Shown: positions 19,602-41,363 of the stretch, in pieces
Layout: every line of letters begins with the position of its first letter
How positions within the stretch are numbered: the stretch's first letter is position 1
Position numbers and translations under genes: made by a program
Source: Macrostomum lignano
Taxonomy: Eukaryota
Assembly: GCA_002269645.1 (NCBI GenBank)
Contig: NIVC01001561.1
Span: 1 to 64,000 of the forward strand
Direction of reading: 5' to 3'
DNA length: 64,000 nucleotides
Notes under the pieces: generated by a model
What the model saw: only the letters and a program-made list of their open reading frames with translations
What the model was told of the DNA's origin: nothing
Databases searched by the model: none

Positions 19602-22600
19602 ATGCAGCCCAAATCATCGAGACGCCGCGGCACAGAAAGGCCGATGGTCCACCAGCTTCCCAATGTTACGAACTATGTCCACGGAGCCATGTCCGACGGT
19701 TCAAAAGACTCGGGCGGCGGCGGCAGCAGCGCTTCTCAACGTGTCCAGCTGATCCGGGAGGTTCGCCACTTCCAGCGAGTACAAGAGGAACCGGACGAGT
19801 GTCAGCTGCCCTGGTCGCTGTTCTACACCCACTGCCGCGGCTCGCTGGACCTGCCGCTTCGCGAGCAAATCCGACTGCGCTACCGTCAGCCCGATGTGGA
19901 ATTTGCCGCCGAGGACAAAGGCAAGGCAAAATCTGAGGCGGGCATCAGGCAGAGTCTCGTCTCGCTGGGATCCAGCCTGGACGAATACAGTAGCCGCCTA
20001 GAAGATGACGACGTGGTTGACAGGTGGGTCGTCCGGCATCTGGATCAGGGACAGCTGAAGTTAAGCTTCTGGACTGGAATCCAACTTAAAGCGGATCCAG
20101 TTAAGCCTGACACATCGAAAGTTACAACATGGACTGGAGTCTAAATTTGGTTTAGCAACCTAGAAAGCCTAGCTTAAAATGGCTTTAGTCTAACTGGGAC
20201 TGGAGTCTAACTTAATGTCAGGCCTACTGTGGGGAATTGCTACGATGGCAAGGCTCACGAGAGGAATTGCTAAGATGTCAAGGCTCACGGGGGGATTGTT
20301 GAGATGTTAAGTCTCACGGGGGGAATTGCTAAGATGTCAAGGCTTACGGGGGGAATTGCTAAGATGTCAAGGCTCACGGGGGGAATCGCTGAGATATCAA
20401 GGCTTACGGGGGGAATTGCTAAGATGTCAAGGCTCACAAGGGGGGTATTGCTGAGATGTCAAGGCTCACGGGGGGGGGAATCGCTGAGATGCCAAGGCTC
20501 ACGGGGGGGGGGATTGCTGAGATATCAAGGCTCACGGGGGGATTTCAGAGATGTCAAGGCTAAGGTCAGATGCTACATGTAGTTTATTCAAAAAATTTAT
20601 TCCATTCTTTGTTTGCTCCCTAACGGGGGGCGCTGATTGCTAGCCTAAGTTGACTGAATTCAATGTAACTTAGGATTAGTATAGTGGACACAATTATAAA
20701 CTCGTCGCTTGACAAACCTGCACTTTTGGAGTCGCCAGATCCTCGAACTGAATTTTCACAACCACAGCTACCACCGTCTGCTGGTCTCCTTTGGCAACCG
20801 GGTTGAGTGGCAGCTCTATTTCAAATCCGAGGAGCTCCTGCAGAGGCGAGTTCGCGACCTCATTGGCAGCCTGACCCTCGCCCTGCTGGAGAACAGCGAC
20901 TCTGCAGCTCCAGAGATCGAGACCCGAATTGGCACCGCCATCACCTCCATTCTGGTCGAGAGCTTGACAGTACGCCTGGCTTTACTGGAGAATTTTCAAC
21001 ACTGCTGGCTTCTGAACCCCAGTAGCTTCTCAACTCATCCAGTAGCTTCTCAACTCATCTTATAGTTTCTCAACCGATTTAATAGTTTCTCAACTCATTC
21101 AATAGCTTCTCAACTCATTTAATACATGTACGAGCGTATCTAACTATAGCAGTGCATGTGCATATTTTAAGACAGTCCCTATTGATTTTAAACATTGATG
21201 AATATTTGAAGCCTTTACTGTCTCCATTTAACCATTATCAGGGCCTGATCAACCGCTTTTCAAGAAAATGGAGAATGGTAAGTGAAAGTTGAATTCTAAT
21301 GCACCTAAATCAGACAGATACATGAAACGAAGGATTCCGAGATCCGGTTTACTCGGGCTCCTCAAAGCGCCCCCCCCCCTCTCCCCAAGGTGTTCATGTC
21401 AGACCATCAGGAAAGCATCGCCGCTATGCGATCAGACTACGAGCGAACGGCAGTCAAACTGCGCAGCTTCCTGCACGTGTCCCGCCTCTCCTTCCTGGCC
21501 CCGATGCTCCGGCCGAATCCAGAGTACTCCTCAACAGCGCAGGCCCCGGATTCGAATCCTAAGCGTAGCGTCGCTCTCGTTGCCGCGGCGACTGTCGAGA
21601 TCTCGTCTGCGATGTCGCCAGCTGCGGATCGCGGCAATGCAGGGAACAGCGGAGCCAGCGGCGCCAGCGCCGGAGGGGCGCTGCAGCAGGGCAGATCGGC
21701 GCCACGGCTGTCGCTGGAGACGCAGAATGTGGCTTGGCCCAGCCAGCAGATTTGGGCAGGTGAGAATGCGGCTTCTCAGCCTTCACACTTCTCACCTCTT
21801 GTCGCTTCTCATCTCCTGGGTTTTCCCATCTGATTCTTATCAGCTTTGACACTTTTCTCACCCCTGACACATGTCTCACCTCTGACACTTGTCTCACCCC
21901 TGACACATGTCTCACCCCTGACACTTGTCTCACCCCTGACACATGTCTCACCCCTGACACTTGTCTCACCCCTGACACTTGTCTCACCTCTGACACTTGT
22001 CTCACCTCTGACACTTGTCTCACCCCTGACACTTGTCTCACCCCTGACACTTGTCTCACCTCTGACACTTGTCTCACCCCTGACACATGTCTCACCCCTG
22101 ACACTTGTCTCACCCCTGACACATGTCTCACCCCTGACACTTGTCTCACCCCTGACACTTGTCTCACCTCTGACACTTGTCTCACCCCTGACACTTGTCT
22201 CACCTCTGACACTTGTCTCACCTCTGACACTTGTCTCACCCCTGACACTTGTCTCACCCCTGACACATGTCTCACCCCTGACACTTGTCTCACCCCTGAC
22301 ACTTGTCTCACCTCTGACACTTGTCTCACCCCTGACACTTGTCTCACCCCTGACACTTGTCTCACCCCTGACACTTGTCTCACCCCTGACACATGTCTCA
22401 CCCCTGACACTTGTCTCACCCCTGACACATGTCTCACCCCTGACACTTGTCTCACCCCTGACACTTGTCTCACCCCTGACACATGTCTCACCCCTGACAA
22501 TTGTCTCACCCCTGACACTTGTCTCACCCCTGACACTTGTCTCACCTCTGACACTTGTCTCACCCCTGACACTTGTCTCACCCCTGACACTTGTCTCACC

Positions 22601-40600: not shown

Positions 40601-41363
40601 CGGTGACCCAGGTGAAGCGGCAGTCTGGGGCCTGTGGCGCGGCCGGGCCACCAGGAATTCGCAGATCATGTACGAGGTGCGTATCAGGATGTGGGCAAAG
40701 ATGAGCAGAGAAGCACCTACAAGCTGAGCCATTTTTTTTGTTTCTTTATGCCAACGACACAGCTTATCCAGATGGGACACAAGCTTAGAATATGTTGTCT
40801 TCAAATATTGTTTTGCTGATGCACAATTATTCAAGCAGACAACGACATAAAGTACGTGACTATAGAAATATCTGGCCGATGTGAATTTTCAGTCCCATCT
40901 GAGCTCCAGGCGTAACACTTAATAGGTACGCGGCTGATTAAAATCAGTCCAAAATAACAAAACATTTTGGAACGTACTAGACAAGACCCTTTTCTACCCT
41001 TGCATGTGTATCCGGAATATTTGAGAGCAAATAGTTATGCATCAATATATCAGTACTAAGCTTATTGAAGCATATATTTCCTCCCAAAACGCACAGGTCT
41101 TTCGCTCCGTGCCGAACAACGCTGCCAACACAATCGAACGATTGCGCGACTTCACATCGCTGGACTATCTGCGTCGGCGGGCTAAGCTTTACTCTAACAG
41201 CCGGGCCACGGTTGGACAGGGCCTGGAGAAGCTAGCTGGCTTCTGCGGCACCCTGGTCCGGTACAGCGGCCATTTCCTAGAGGGCAATGATCTGACCCAT
41301 ATCGACGAGGACACCAAGCGTTGGCGTGCGGCCCTGCTTTGGCCGGATTTTTCGTTAGTTTAA
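19602..41363 (+). CDS. Phospholipase D1/2-family protein (divergent PX, PH, two degenerate HKD domains), ~1,943 aa, predicted pseudoenzyme
   Basis: Exons 19602-20023, 20732-20969, 21390-21759, 22951-23176, 23416-23571, 23963-24055, 24730-25495, 27016-27300, 27879-28000, 28445-28625, 28723-28977, 30202-30424, 31876-32126, 37584-38193, 38265-38788, 39138-39569, 40266-40676, 41097-41363. Total 5,832 nt with all phases consistent. PLD motifs: SFLHVSRLSF, RWMFVGD (PH), AQWYVD---YF-AVADAI, APEVYLKRP, EK-VVIDQ-VA---G-DL-WG-WD, AARDVARHFIQRWNF, LRSLGKWS-G, IYLVIPLLP, LLIADD---IIGS, LR-TLW-EHL, VFRSVPN. Exon 1-2 boundaries are the least certain. Confidence 0.9.
20225..20565. repeat. 30-bp minisatellite (GCTAAGATGTCAAGGCTCACGGGGGGAATT)
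   Basis: About 11 units in PLD intron 1. Confidence 0.9.
21848..22805. repeat. 18-bp minisatellite (CACCCCTGACACTTGTCT)
   Basis: About 52 units. Confidence 0.95.
23239..23350. repeat. 12-bp minisatellite (AGGGTTGTCGGC)
   Basis: About 9 units. Confidence 0.9.
23705..23915. repeat. (GATT)n microsatellite
   Basis: Pure tract 23808-23915 with a degenerate left flank. Confidence 0.95.
24222..24667. repeat. 20-bp minisatellite (CCAATCTACTCAAAGCCART)
   Basis: About 22 units. Confidence 0.95.
25593..26611. mobile_element. Foldback-like non-autonomous DNA element with a 16-bp tandem-repeat body
   Basis: TIR GGGGACTTTGATATCTCC / GGAGATATGAAACTCCCC; flanks GTGAGAGC / TTGAGAGC (7/8); ~50 direct CACTTCATATCTCCGA units on the left and ~5 inverted GGAGATATGAAAC units on the right. 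Confidence 0.72.
27372..27500 (+). mobile_element. Diverged SINE family A core fragment
   Basis: GGCCCGCTGTACGCCCTGTGTGAGCG; weaker downstream similarity. Confidence 0.45.
27580..27790 (+). mobile_element. Partial copy of the Charlie-like MITE family
   Basis: GCCTCTCTATCC-GCCCTCGGG...TTTGAAACTTCACAA...CAAGGTTTG..TCTCTTCTCAGCTC plus a CT-rich tract, as in 30600-30900. Confidence 0.6.
28145..28410 (+). mobile_element. tRNA-derived SINE, family B, with (ATT)n tail
   Basis: A box TAGTGGTTAGAG, B box GGTTCGATTC, hairpin CACTCGGAA-CAAT-TTCCGAGTG, motif CAGCTGTAAAATGGG, and a 3' (TAT)n tail. Confidence 0.7.
29000..29992. mobile_element. Probable MITE remnant with an expanded GGCGCC-rich minisatellite (29060-29870)
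   Basis: Shares AAATGAGTGCCT and AGGCAATTG with the 41673 MITE; its right end CCCCCTTTGGCTACGTCCT resembles the GGCTACGCCACTG TIR; no left TIR or TSD seen. Confidence 0.45.
30568..31828. mobile_element. hAT (Charlie-like) MITE with expanded (CTCTC)n and an internal duplication
   Basis: Imperfect TIRs CAGGG-CGACAAACT / AGTTTGCCGATCCCTG; flanks ATTCAAAT / ATTTAAAT (7/8 match); the segment AAAATTCACAATAGCAATCCGTCCCGTTCAAGGTTTGTCTCTTCTCAACTC occurs at ~30641 and ~31075. Confidence 0.7.
32155..36445. repeat. 4.3-kb 14-bp satellite (TAGTCATGGCCACT) with variant units and higher-order structure
   Basis: About 305 units; recurrent variants TAGTCATAGCCTCT and TAGTTATGGTTACT; lies inside a PLD intron. 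Confidence 0.97.
36535..36740 (+). mobile_element. Diverged SINE family A core fragment
   Basis: GGCACAGAGAGTGCAC...AGGGCCGCTGTACACTCTGTGTGA...GTGCGTGCCTGCGTAC...GCTCAGGA. Confidence 0.6.
39960..40095 (-). mobile_element. Diverged SINE family A core fragment
   Basis: Reverse complement has GGCACAGAGTGTACATGCC...GGCCGCTGTCCACCCTGTGTGAG...GCTCAGGAGTCAGCGGAATGGGC. Confidence 0.6.

What the first reader, a model, noticed from the sequence alone, without database searches (positions are those of the whole stretch)
19602..41363. Giant, intact but catalytically dead phospholipase D (pseudo-PLD) that keeps its PIP2-binding motif
Seen: HKD1 reads KH-N-EKCVVID (Asn at 27912-27914 where PLD1/2 have HH-E-K), and HKD2 reads IYV-Q-S-N-LLIADD...GSPSVTDHG (40377-40385; canonical IYVHSKLLIADD...GSANINDRS). 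Other active-site motifs are also changed: DWWLSP to GSVLAP, PRMPWHD to PRLPVHS, YIENQFF to YLESELF, and the conserved C-terminal WT end is replaced by WPDFSLV. The ORF is nevertheless unbroken over 18 phase-consistent exons (~1,943 aa), structural motifs are kept, and the polybasic AARDVARHFIQRWNF is exact. Known: both HKD motifs are required for PLD1/2 catalysis, and RDVARHFIQRW is the PI(4,5)P2-binding region. Inference: targeted loss of catalytic residues points to a selected lipid-binding scaffold or dominant-negative PX-PH-PLD pseudoenzyme. I do not know of one described for this subfamily.
Basis: partly seen in the sequence, partly recalled or inferred. Interest (0 to 1): 0.85.

Follow-up and report, generated by a model that had tools for sequence, protein, structure and literature searches.

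The report
Catalytically dead flatworm phospholipase D paralog
An intact 19-exon gene of the flatworm Macrostomum lignano encodes a PLD1/2-type phospholipase D that has lost the catalytic histidines of both active-site motifs but keeps its fold and phosphoinositide-binding residues, so it is most likely a lineage-specific non-catalytic "pseudo-PLD", not an enzyme or a decaying pseudogene.

Summary
The window is Macrostomum lignano DNA. HKD1 reads H-N-E-K (Asn codon AAC at 27912-27914). HKD2 reads Q-S-N...GSPSVTDHG (40377-40385), so it lacks His, Lys and both Asn. The other quoted motif changes are also present.

The Arg triad of the polybasic PI(4,5)P2 motif and its net charge are kept, as is the PH-domain Arg-Trp. 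The PX domain is degenerate and cannot be detected statistically.

Several results argue for a maintained non-catalytic protein rather than a pseudogene:
- A second M. lignano paralog (62% identical) carries the same derived residues, including HKD2 Q-S-N.
- 70% of PLD-invariant positions are kept, against about 33% overall identity.
- GC3 is 0.73, as in neighbouring genes.
- Neutral-drift simulations almost never keep the frame open.

No transcript data or dN/dS could be obtained. The gene branches with M. lignano's own canonical PLDs. No relative above about 40% identity appeared outside this species among 1.84 billion cluster representatives. An unrelated lophotrochozoan transcript shows two of the same substitutions (HKD1 His->Asn, HKD2 Lys->Asn) independently. 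The function, as a PIP2-targeted adaptor or competitor, is inferred only.

The parts
19602..20059 (+). Exon 1. Start Met is uncertain (in-frame ATGs at 19437, 19602, 19644, 19689). Donor at 20060; an alternative phase-compatible donor is at 20024.
   Evidence: Open frame, GC3 0.70 against flank 0.43. No transcript or homolog support for the donor.
20768..20969 (+). Exon 2. PX remnant NYHRLLVSFGNRVEWQLYFK, matching canonical NLYxIxLxHGxFxWxIxRRYKHF; the RR[YF] signature is lost.
   Evidence: Junctions match P0006.
21242..21277 (+). Exon 3 (36 nt), GLINRFSRKWRM. Remnant of the PX 'PxFP' segment.
   Evidence: Matches P0006 and P0066.
21390..21759 (+). Exon 4. End of the PX remnant and the PX-PH linker signature FLHVSRLSF (21468-21494; canonical FLEVSxLSF), followed by an S/A/G-rich insert.
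   Evidence: Matches P0066.
22951..23176 (+). Exon 5. Start of the PH domain.
   Evidence: Matches P0002; P0006 splices out 23004-23084.
23416..23571 (+). Exon 6. PH domain core (E)RWMFVGDTYIGLLNMESNEIEEVMLFDAEFHVLTGK. Keeps the Arg-Trp equivalent to PLD2 R237/W238.
   Evidence: hhalign probability 95%, E 2.7e-8. PLD2 mutagenesis in PMC2173982.
23963..24055 (+). Exon 7. End of the PH domain.
24730..25495 (+). Exon 8. Low-complexity linker with the basic cluster RRKRRKKQREAR (25148-25183), then the start of the catalytic domain, including GSVLAP (25412-25429; canonical DWWLSP).
27016..27300 (+). Exon 9. N-lobe strand/helix plus a 53-aa insert before HKD1.
   Evidence: Insert pLDDT below 50.
27879..28000 (+). 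Exon 10. Degenerate HKD1, YYK-H-N-E-K-CVVID...SGVDLTWGSWD. The catalytic His is replaced by Asn (AAC at 27912-27914). Lys and Asp are kept. GRWD is changed to GSWD.
28445..28625 (+). Exon 11. Inter-lobe loop insert.
28723..28977 (+). Exon 12. Inter-lobe loop insert.
30202..30382 (+). Exon 13. Loop insert. I chose the donor at 30383; UniProt model P0002 instead reads through to a stop at 30427.
   Evidence: The donor is inferred from phase only.
31876..32126 (+). Exon 14. Loop insert, inferred. Skipping exons 13 and 14 together would also keep the frame.
   Evidence: GC3 0.74 against flank 0.46.
37584..38193 (+). Exon 15. Predicted long helices, then PRLPVHS (38079-38099; canonical PRMPWHD) and the polybasic motif AARDVARHFIQRWNF (38124-38168), which continues as ACANVYRRARK across the junction to 38272.
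38265..38788 (+). Exon 16. KPLLVPR (canonical PxLLPKS), then a disordered insert with polyQ (38528-38569).
   Evidence: The junctions are inferred.
39138..39569 (+). Exon 17. C-lobe, with LRSLGKWSGG and YLESELF (39309-39329; canonical YIENQFF).
   Evidence: Paralog P0001 starts exactly at this exon.
40266..40676 (+). Exon 18. Degenerate HKD2, IYV-Q-S-N-LLIADD...GSPSVTDHG (40374-40445). His is changed to Gln (40377-79), Lys to Asn (40383-85), and GSANIN to GSPSVT.
41097..41363 (+). Exon 19. C-terminal region ending WPDFSLV (41340-41360), with stop TAA at 41361-63. The canonical end is ...WT.
   Evidence: P0001 ends WPDFALV.

Best explanation
The locus is a real, intact M. lignano gene for a PLD1/2-type phospholipase D homolog. 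It arose by duplication within the Macrostomum or flatworm PLD lineage and diverged fast. It lost the residues needed for the HKD phosphatidyl-histidine mechanism: His in HKD1, and His, Lys and both Asn in HKD2, plus several other pocket residues. It has since been kept as a non-catalytic protein, a pseudoenzyme.

Shown:
- The catalytic residues are lost.
- The bilobed PLD fold is retained.
- The PH-domain Arg-Trp, the Arg triad of the polybasic motif and that motif's net charge are retained.
- The inactivating substitutions predate the split from a second paralog that is now 38% diverged.

Inferred mechanism: the protein still docks on PI(4,5)P2-rich or acidic membranes through the PH domain and the polybasic patch. 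There it acts by binding rather than hydrolysis. It could be an adaptor whose roughly 650 disordered residues (polyQ, S/A-rich, K/R-rich) recruit partners. It could also be a natural counterpart of the laboratory dominant-negative PLD mutants, competing with the active M. lignano PLDs for PIP2 or activators.
For: - Identity and fold: HMMER hits to the human PLD1/2 catalytic domains at E 7e-35 and 2.5e-30. The AF2 core has pLDDT 85-98, and the best Foldseek hits are 6ohr, 6ohm and 6u8z at E about 1e-28 with target-normalised TM 0.5-0.6.
- Loss of catalysis: alignments. Among 223 PLD relatives, HKD2 is canonical in 201 and degenerate in 4.
- Real gene: 19 phase-consistent GT-AG exons and 1941 codons with no stop. 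Every exon has GC3 0.58-0.81 against intron flanks of 0.35-0.54. CDS GC3 is 0.73, as in neighbouring genes, against 0.47 for introns.
- Selection: paralog P0001 is 62% identical and shares 10 identical derived states at otherwise invariant PLD positions, including H->Q and K->N. The dead HKD2 segment is about 93% identical between the paralogs. The window keeps 75 of 107 invariant positions against about 33% overall identity. In a neutral-drift simulation, 0.3% of replicates stayed open at 19% aa divergence and none at 38%.
- Membrane-binding residues: RDVARHFIQR is exact, followed by RRARK, giving net +6 as in PLD2 554-575. The PH 'RW' is kept. Both are experimentally required in PLD2 (PMC2173982).
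- Origin: in NJ bootstraps the dead pair is supported at 100% and the dead pair plus all M. lignano canonical PLDs at 92-97%. In the exhaustive search, the best hits after the paralog are M. lignano's own canonical PLDs at 39-42% identity.
Against: - There is no transcript, protein or expression evidence for the full-length product.
- Public models of the gene are fragments. One of them (P0002) stops at 30427.
- dN/dS could not be computed because no DNA for the paralog was available.
- M. lignano is recently polyploid and rich in duplicates, so relaxed selection is plausible.
- P0066, another copy or model of the gene, contains frameshift-like stretches.
- The PX domain has decayed, and 32 of 107 invariant positions changed, so constraint is clearly reduced.
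- Retention of the polybasic segment may reflect its structural role in the fold rather than lipid binding.
- The tree is neighbour-joining only, with long branches.
- The AF2 fold is driven by an alignment of canonical PLDs.
Confidence: 0.62

Rival explanations
1. It is a decaying or functionless duplicate. This would be a young unprocessed pseudogene, or a copy under relaxed selection after the Macrostomum genome duplication, that has not yet acquired stops.
For: - M. lignano carries many PLD copies.
- The PX domain is degenerate.
- 30% of invariant positions are changed.
- P0066 shows frameshift-like differences.
- No full-length annotation or transcript was found.
Against: - Divergence from canonical PLDs is very deep (about 33% identity), yet 1941 codons and 18 introns are intact.
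- The inactivating changes are shared with a paralog that is 38% diverged and also open.
- The simulation gives 0.3% open frames at half that divergence.
- GC3 of 0.73 has not relaxed towards the intronic 0.47.
Confidence: 0.15
2. The single giant ORF is a gene-model artefact. In this reading the locus yields separate or truncated products: an N-terminal PX-PH-HKD1 protein ending near 30427, as in UniProt model P0002, and a separate C-terminal product like the 358-aa P0001 model.
For: - All public models are partial. P0002 ends at a stop at 30427.
- Junctions 13-14-15 and 15-16-17 rest only on phase, GT-AG sites and GC3.
- Intron 14 is 5.4 kb, of which about 4.3 kb is 14-bp satellite.
Against: - The two halves are colinear on one strand and in compatible phases. 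Together they form one PLD fold, which needs both lobes.
- Both halves show the same kind of degeneration.
- The inferred exons carry the coding GC3 signature.
- The polybasic tail RRARK is completed across the 15/16 junction.
Confidence: 0.1
3. It is still an enzyme. It would use migrated or alternative residues, for example the retained His875 next to the lost HKD1 His, or it would have a new substrate or chemistry.
For: - The first His of canonical 'HHEK' is retained (KH-N-EK), as are Lys and Asp of HKD1 and Asp, Gly and Ser of HKD2.
- The pocket region is the part most conserved between the two paralogs.
- Pseudoenzymes with migrated catalytic residues are known (PMC10211241, abstract listed).
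Against: - HKD2 has lost His, Lys and both Asn together, so neither the nucleophile nor the general acid of the two-His mechanism remains.
- Several other pocket residues that are invariant across canonical PLDs are also changed: W743S, R898S, W1364V, D1366S and Q1634E.
- By established knowledge, not tested here, single HKD mutations abolish PLD1/2 activity.
Confidence: 0.06

Closest known systems
Classical eukaryotic PLD1/PLD2 (PX-PH-HKD phospholipase D), including the canonical M. lignano paralogs (for example BOX15_Mlig002054g1 and Mlig010321g1)
   Same: - Colinear architecture: PX remnant, PH domain, then a bilobed catalytic domain with an inter-lobe loop.
- It gives the best sequence and structure matches.
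- The polybasic PI(4,5)P2 motif, the PH Arg-Trp and 70% of invariant residues are kept.
- It branches with the M. lignano PLDs.
   Different: - Both HKD histidines, the HKD2 Lys and the GSxN Asn are lost.
- DWWLSP, PRMPWHD and IENQFF are altered.
- The C-terminus is extended beyond the conserved Trp.
- The PX domain is degenerate.
- About 650 extra disordered residues are present.
Laboratory catalytically inactive PLD mutants (PLD1 K898R, PLD2 K758R) used as dominant negatives
   Same: A full-length PLD scaffold with a dead HKD site and intact membrane-targeting modules. PLD2 K758R appears in PMC2173982. Its dominant-negative use is from my own knowledge.
   Different: Those are single engineered substitutions. 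Here there is natural, multi-residue and ancient loss. No evidence shows that this protein competes with the active PLDs.
Known PLD-superfamily pseudoenzymes: the FAM83 DUF1669 pseudo-PLD domain and PLD5
   Same: A PLD-like fold with incomplete HKD motifs and no PLD activity. FAM83 proteins act as scaffolds, anchoring CK1 (PMC6008594).
   Different: They belong to different subfamilies. FAM83 is a single-lobe, vertebrate-only domain, and PLD5 is of the PLD3/4 transmembrane type. The Foldseek hits to PLD3/4 and to 4urj (human BJ-TSA-9) are far weaker, at E about 1e-6. Neither has a PH domain or the polybasic motif.
P0136, a dead PX-PH PLD from a Logan transcript assembly (SRR32924703)
   Same: The same two substitutions, HKD1 His->Asn and HKD2 Lys->Asn, and GSANIN degraded (to GSAKIQ). 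RDVARHFIQRW is retained and the 1079-aa ORF is intact.
   Different: It keeps the HKD2 His, a clear PX domain and 95 of 107 invariant residues. It groups with the Lingula PLD and never with the Macrostomum gene (0% bootstrap), so its origin is independent.

Membership tests
PLD superfamily (HKD fold) | Two PLDc-type lobes forming the bilobed PLD catalytic fold | tested here: met
   - HMMER hits to the PLD1/2 structures at E 7e-35 and 2.5e-30.
- The Pfam PLDc hit scores 24.2 bits, above the 21.9 cut-off.
- The AF2 model's best Foldseek hits are the human PLD1/2 catalytic domains at E about 1e-28.
PLD superfamily (HKD fold) | Two intact HxK(x)4D(x)6G(G/S)xN motifs | tested here: not met
   - HKD1 reads N-x-K...D...SGVD, with the His lost.
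- HKD2 reads Q-x-N...D...GSPS, with His, Lys and Asn lost.
- Pfam PLDc_2 at HKD2 scores 12.3 bits, below the 27 cut-off.
Classical PX-PH PLD (PLD1/2 type) | N-terminal PX domain | tested here: inconclusive
   - There is no Pfam PX hit at E<=1.
- hhalign against canonical PX regions gives probability 13%.
- Only colinear remnants remain, and the RR[YF] signature is lost.
Classical PX-PH PLD (PLD1/2 type) | PH domain between PX and the catalytic domain | tested here: met
   - hhalign gives probability 95%, E 2.7e-8, over model residues about 395-508.
- phmmer gives weak colinear hits.
- The Arg-Trp is kept.
- Pfam's PH model does not hit.
Classical PX-PH PLD (PLD1/2 type) | Polybasic PI(4,5)P2 motif next to conserved region III | tested here: met
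   RDVARHFIQRWNF is exact, followed by RRARK, for net +6. The motif definition and required arginines come from PMC2173982. Binding itself was not tested.
Classical PX-PH PLD (PLD1/2 type) | Closest relatives are PLD1/2-type proteins | tested here: met
   The gene groups with the M. lignano canonical PLDs at 92-97% NJ bootstrap.
Classical PX-PH PLD (PLD1/2 type) | Conserved C-terminal ...WT end | tested here: not met
   The protein ends ...LLWPDFSLV, and the paralog ends ...FFWPDFALV.
Pseudoenzyme (maintained inactive enzyme homolog) | Catalytic residues absent while the fold is kept | tested here: met
   
Pseudoenzyme (maintained inactive enzyme homolog) | Evolutionary maintenance (purifying selection) after loss of catalysis | tested here: inconclusive
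   Indirect support comes from derived states shared with a 62%-identical paralog, an intact ORF, GC3 and the drift simulation. dN/dS could not be computed.
Pseudoenzyme (maintained inactive enzyme homolog) | Expressed protein lacking activity | not testable with these tools
   No transcript or proteome data were reachable, and no assay was possible.
FAM83 / PLD5-type pseudo-PLDs | Membership of the DUF1669 or PLD3/4/5 subfamilies | tested here: not met
   The best matches are PLD1/2. PLD3/4 and 4urj (human BJ-TSA-9) give only distant fold matches at E about 1e-6.

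The most novel reading that the evidence does not exclude
Macrostomum maintains a small family of dead PLD1/2-type proteins: this gene plus the P0001 paralog. These would act as endogenous, PIP2-targeted negative regulators or adaptors of phospholipase D signalling. 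The same His->Asn and Lys->Asn route to inactivation has been taken independently in another lophotrochozoan. That would point to a recurrent, selectable 'pseudo-PLD' state of the classical PLD scaffold that has not been described.
Probability: 0.2. Interest if true: 0.6.

Novelty: new variant of a known kind. Interest (0 to 1): 0.42.

Why it matters
Classical PLD1/2 enzymes are treated as obligate catalysts. Their non-catalytic roles are known only from engineered dead mutants. A naturally maintained dead member, in a flatworm that allows RNAi and transgenesis, would let one ask what the PLD scaffold does without phosphatidic-acid production. It would also add the PLD1/2 subfamily to the list of enzyme families with pseudoenzyme offshoots. 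On present evidence the case is confined to this species, with no functional data, so its importance is moderate.

Tried and rejected
- **DNA for the paralog or other copies.** I looked for DNA of P0001 or P0002 to compute dN/dS. Neither is on record.
- **Third homolog search.** Using the loop plus C-terminal half, it returned no further Macrostomum copies, and the polyQ words probably diluted the candidate list.
- **Structure prediction.** Only residues 742-1941 could be modelled, so there is no structural test of PX or PH.
- **Orthology with P0136.** I considered that the Macrostomum gene and P0136 are orthologs of an ancient dead-PLD clade. I rejected this: 0% bootstrap, and P0136 is sister to Lingula.
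- **Sequencing error at the HKD codons.** Rejected, because the same residues occur in models from another assembly.
- **First tree script.** It timed out, and the first motif-column script mis-indexed. Both were redone.
- **Literature.** Searches for a dead PX-PH PLD found only FAM83 and PLD3/4/5.

Full report
**What the window is.** Translated exons of the region match UniProt entries of Macrostomum lignano at 97-100% (P0002 = A0A1I8I7M6, P0006, P0066). The window is therefore genomic DNA of this free-living flatworm. Introns have 47% GC and are packed with 14-20-bp tandem repeats. One 5.4-kb intron holds 309 copies of a 14-bp unit.

**Checking the observation.** I listed stop-free frames on the + strand and read every candidate boundary.
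- The resulting chain has 19 exons, 19602-41363. All have AG acceptors and GT donors, and all are phase-consistent. The CDS is 5826 nt, giving 1941 aa with only the terminal stop.
- Junctions of exons 2-13 agree with the UniProt fragment models, and those of exons 17-19 agree with paralog P0001. The fragment models disagree with one another at two places: P0006 reads a different frame at the start of exon 4, and it splices out 23004-23084 inside exon 5.
- The exon 1 donor (20060, or alternatively 20024) and the junctions 13-14-15-16-17 rest on phase, splice consensus and codon-position composition only.
- Every exon, including those without homology support, has GC3 of 0.58-0.81 against 0.35-0.54 in its intron flanks.
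- The motif readings are exact. HKD1 is YYK-H-N-E-K-CVVID with Asn = AAC at 27912-27914. HKD2 is IYV-Q-S-N-LLIADD...GSPSVTDHG with Gln at 40377-79 and Asn at 40383-85.
- HMMER alignments to the crystallised human PLD1 and PLD2 catalytic domains (E 7e-35 and 2.5e-30) place these residues opposite the catalytic HxK of each motif.
- GSVLAP, PRLPVHS, YLESELF, the WPDFSLV end and AARDVARHFIQRWNF are all present as stated.
- The HKD1 Asn also occurs in P0002, which comes from a different assembly. The HKD2 Q-S-N also occurs in P0001. These are not read errors.

**How unusual the dead motifs are.** HKD2 is canonical in 201 and degenerate in 4. Among 24 canonical PLDs from fungi to vertebrates, 107 alignment columns are near-invariant.
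- The window protein keeps 75 of them (70%), although overall identity to any canonical PLD is only 30-40%.
- The 32 changes include the catalytic H876N, H1754Q, K1756N, N1771S and N1773T.
- They also include residues in other conserved PLD motifs: W743S, R898S, W1364V, D1366S, Q1634E, F1635L and R1775H.
- So the fold-defining positions are largely preserved, while the chemistry of the two-histidine mechanism is gone.
- 'Targeted' loss is somewhat too strong. Constraint is reduced more generally, and the PX domain has decayed.

**Architecture.**
- Pfam recognises only the HKD1 PLDc motif (24.2 bits; cut-off 21.9). It finds no PX or PH domain.
- A profile of 14 canonical PX-PH N-termini matches the PH domain with 95% probability, E 2.7e-8. 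The Arg-Trp pair, whose mutation inactivates PLD2 targeting, is kept (PMC2173982).
- The PX region is not significant (13%). It shows only colinear remnants, including FLHVSRLSF for the canonical FLEVSxLSF, and it has lost the RR[YF] signature.
- The polybasic motif defined in PLD2 as residues 554-575 requires R554, R558 and R563. It is retained here as RDVARHFIQR, followed by a shifted basic cluster RRARK. The net charge is +6, the same as in PLD2.
- An AlphaFold2 model of residues 742-1941, built with 43 aligned sequences, has a confident core (pLDDT 85-98). About 650 residues fall below 50, and these are the inserts.
- The model's best PDB matches are the human PLD1/2 catalytic domains, at E about 1e-28 and target-normalised TM 0.5-0.6.
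- The 'giant' size is therefore disordered insertion. These inserts include a polyQ run, S/A-rich tracts and the basic cluster RRKRRKKQREAR.

**Gene or pseudogene.** No transcript data were reachable, and dN/dS could not be computed. Four independent lines nevertheless argue for maintenance.
- M. lignano has a second locus, represented by P0001 (A0A1I8IZT2, 358 aa). It is 62% identical over the C-terminal 358 residues and ends in the same WPDF(A/S)LV.
- P0001 shares ten identical derived states at otherwise invariant PLD positions, including H->Q and K->N in HKD2. Inactivation therefore predates their split, and both copies stayed open through 38% amino-acid divergence.
- The dead HKD2 segment is the most conserved stretch between the two paralogs, at about 93%.
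- I simulated neutral substitutions on the 369 C-terminal codons. At 19% divergence they give a mean of 3.8 stops, and 0.3% of replicates stay open. At 38% none stay open, even with indels ignored.
- CDS GC3 is 0.73, like the neighbouring ARM-repeat, rhomboid and K+ channel ORFs (0.71-0.74). It is far above the intronic 0.47.

Against this, the species is recently polyploid with many PLD copies. One model of this gene (P0066) has frameshift-like stretches, which may be assembly errors. All public models of the gene are fragments.

**Origin.**
- I ran an exhaustive HMMER search of 1.84 billion cluster representatives with the C-terminal 622 residues. P0001 scored 491 bits. Nothing else exceeded 209 bits (39% identity).
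- The next hits (P0077, P0078, P0096) are M. lignano's own canonical, HKD-intact PLDs.
- In neighbour-joining trees the window gene pairs with P0001 at 100% bootstrap. The pair joins the M. lignano canonical PLDs at 92-97%.
- This points to a duplication within the flatworm or Macrostomum lineage, followed by rapid divergence. The method is simple and the branches are long, so the placement needs ML confirmation.

**A convergent case.** One retrieved protein, P0136, comes from an intronless 4046-nt Logan contig of run SRR32924703, most likely a transcript.
- It is a 1079-aa PX-PH PLD with the same HKD1 His->Asn and HKD2 Lys->Asn, and GSANIN changed to GSAKIQ. It keeps 95 of 107 invariant positions.
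- Its nearest relatives are brachiopod, annelid and mollusc PLDs. It groups with Lingula at 92-100% and never with the Macrostomum gene.
- Two further HKD2-degenerate PLDs turned up. One is from an ENA metagenome (His->Arg). The other is from the amoebozoan Soliformovum (His->Asp).
- Dead classical PLDs thus arise repeatedly. My literature searches found only FAM83 and PLD3/4/5 discussed as inactive or non-lipase PLD-family proteins.

**Mechanism.** The parts that are shown: the residues for the covalent phosphatidyl-histidine mechanism are absent, the fold is kept, and the PH and polybasic phosphoinositide-binding residues are kept. The rest is inferred. I propose a membrane-docked, non-catalytic protein that acts through binding. 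It could be an adaptor that uses its long disordered inserts. It could also be a competitor of the active PLDs for PI(4,5)P2 or activators, like the engineered K898R and K758R dominant negatives. I give about 0.6 to 'maintained pseudoenzyme' and much less to any specific mode of action.

**Rivals.**
- A functionless decaying duplicate: 0.15.
- A mis-joined gene model with separate half-products: 0.10.
- Residual or novel catalysis via the retained neighbouring His875: 0.06.

**Verdict.** This is a new variant of a known kind: a pseudoenzyme offshoot of the classical PLD subfamily. On present evidence it is found only in M. lignano, and no functional data exist. Interest is moderate.

Noticed in passing
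L001:277-3516 (Logan SRR32924703 contig; protein P0136): This is an independent PX-PH PLD from an unidentified lophotrochozoan. It has the same HKD1 His->Asn and HKD2 Lys->Asn substitutions and an intact 1079-aa ORF on an intronless contig that looks like a transcript. It is sister to the Lingula PLD, so the resemblance is convergent.
   Followed up: partly
proteins P0135 (ENA metagenome) and P0222 (Soliformovum irregulare, EukProt): These are two further PLD1/2-like proteins with a degenerate HKD2 (His->Arg and His->Asp). Loss of the HKD2 histidine recurs sporadically across eukaryotes.
   Followed up: no
window 21847-22838, 24220-24672, 25603-26494, 29059-29861, 31124-31614, 32155-36445: Nearly every intron of the gene is filled with its own short-unit tandem array (10-20 bp). 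Intron 14 holds 309 copies of a 14-bp unit. Several arrays stay open in multiple reading frames, which produces long spurious ORFs.
   Followed up: partly
window 25148-25183 and 38528-38569: The disordered inserts contain an NLS-like basic cluster, RRKRRKKQREAR, and an 18-residue polyQ run followed by more Q/K-rich sequence. Either could affect localisation or interactions.
   Followed up: no
window 1172-1957 (+), 44885-46408 (+), 55013-56320 (-), 58126-58803 (-): Neighbouring coding ORFs are a rhomboid-domain protein (E 4e-20), an armadillo-repeat protein (E 3e-21) and two exons resembling two-pore-domain K+ channels (Ion_trans_2). All have GC3 of about 0.71-0.74.
   Followed up: partly
window 18324-19214 (+): A 296-aa ORF ends about 390 bp upstream of the PLD start. 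It has no Pfam hit and GC3 of 0.63. It may be the last exon of an unrelated upstream gene.
   Followed up: no
protein P0066 versus window 24612-25529: One UniProt model of this gene switches reading frame several times relative to the window and ends early. This is either a frameshifted second copy or indel errors in the older assembly.
   Followed up: no
window 4239-5466, 6219-7490, 52386-53640, 59557-63137: Large satellite blocks lie outside the gene. Two arrays of related 16-bp units share the core ACAATCCCCAA. There is a 1.25-kb (CCAA)n block and about 2.7 kb of related 15-bp TCTCTCAGGGG-type units.
   Followed up: no
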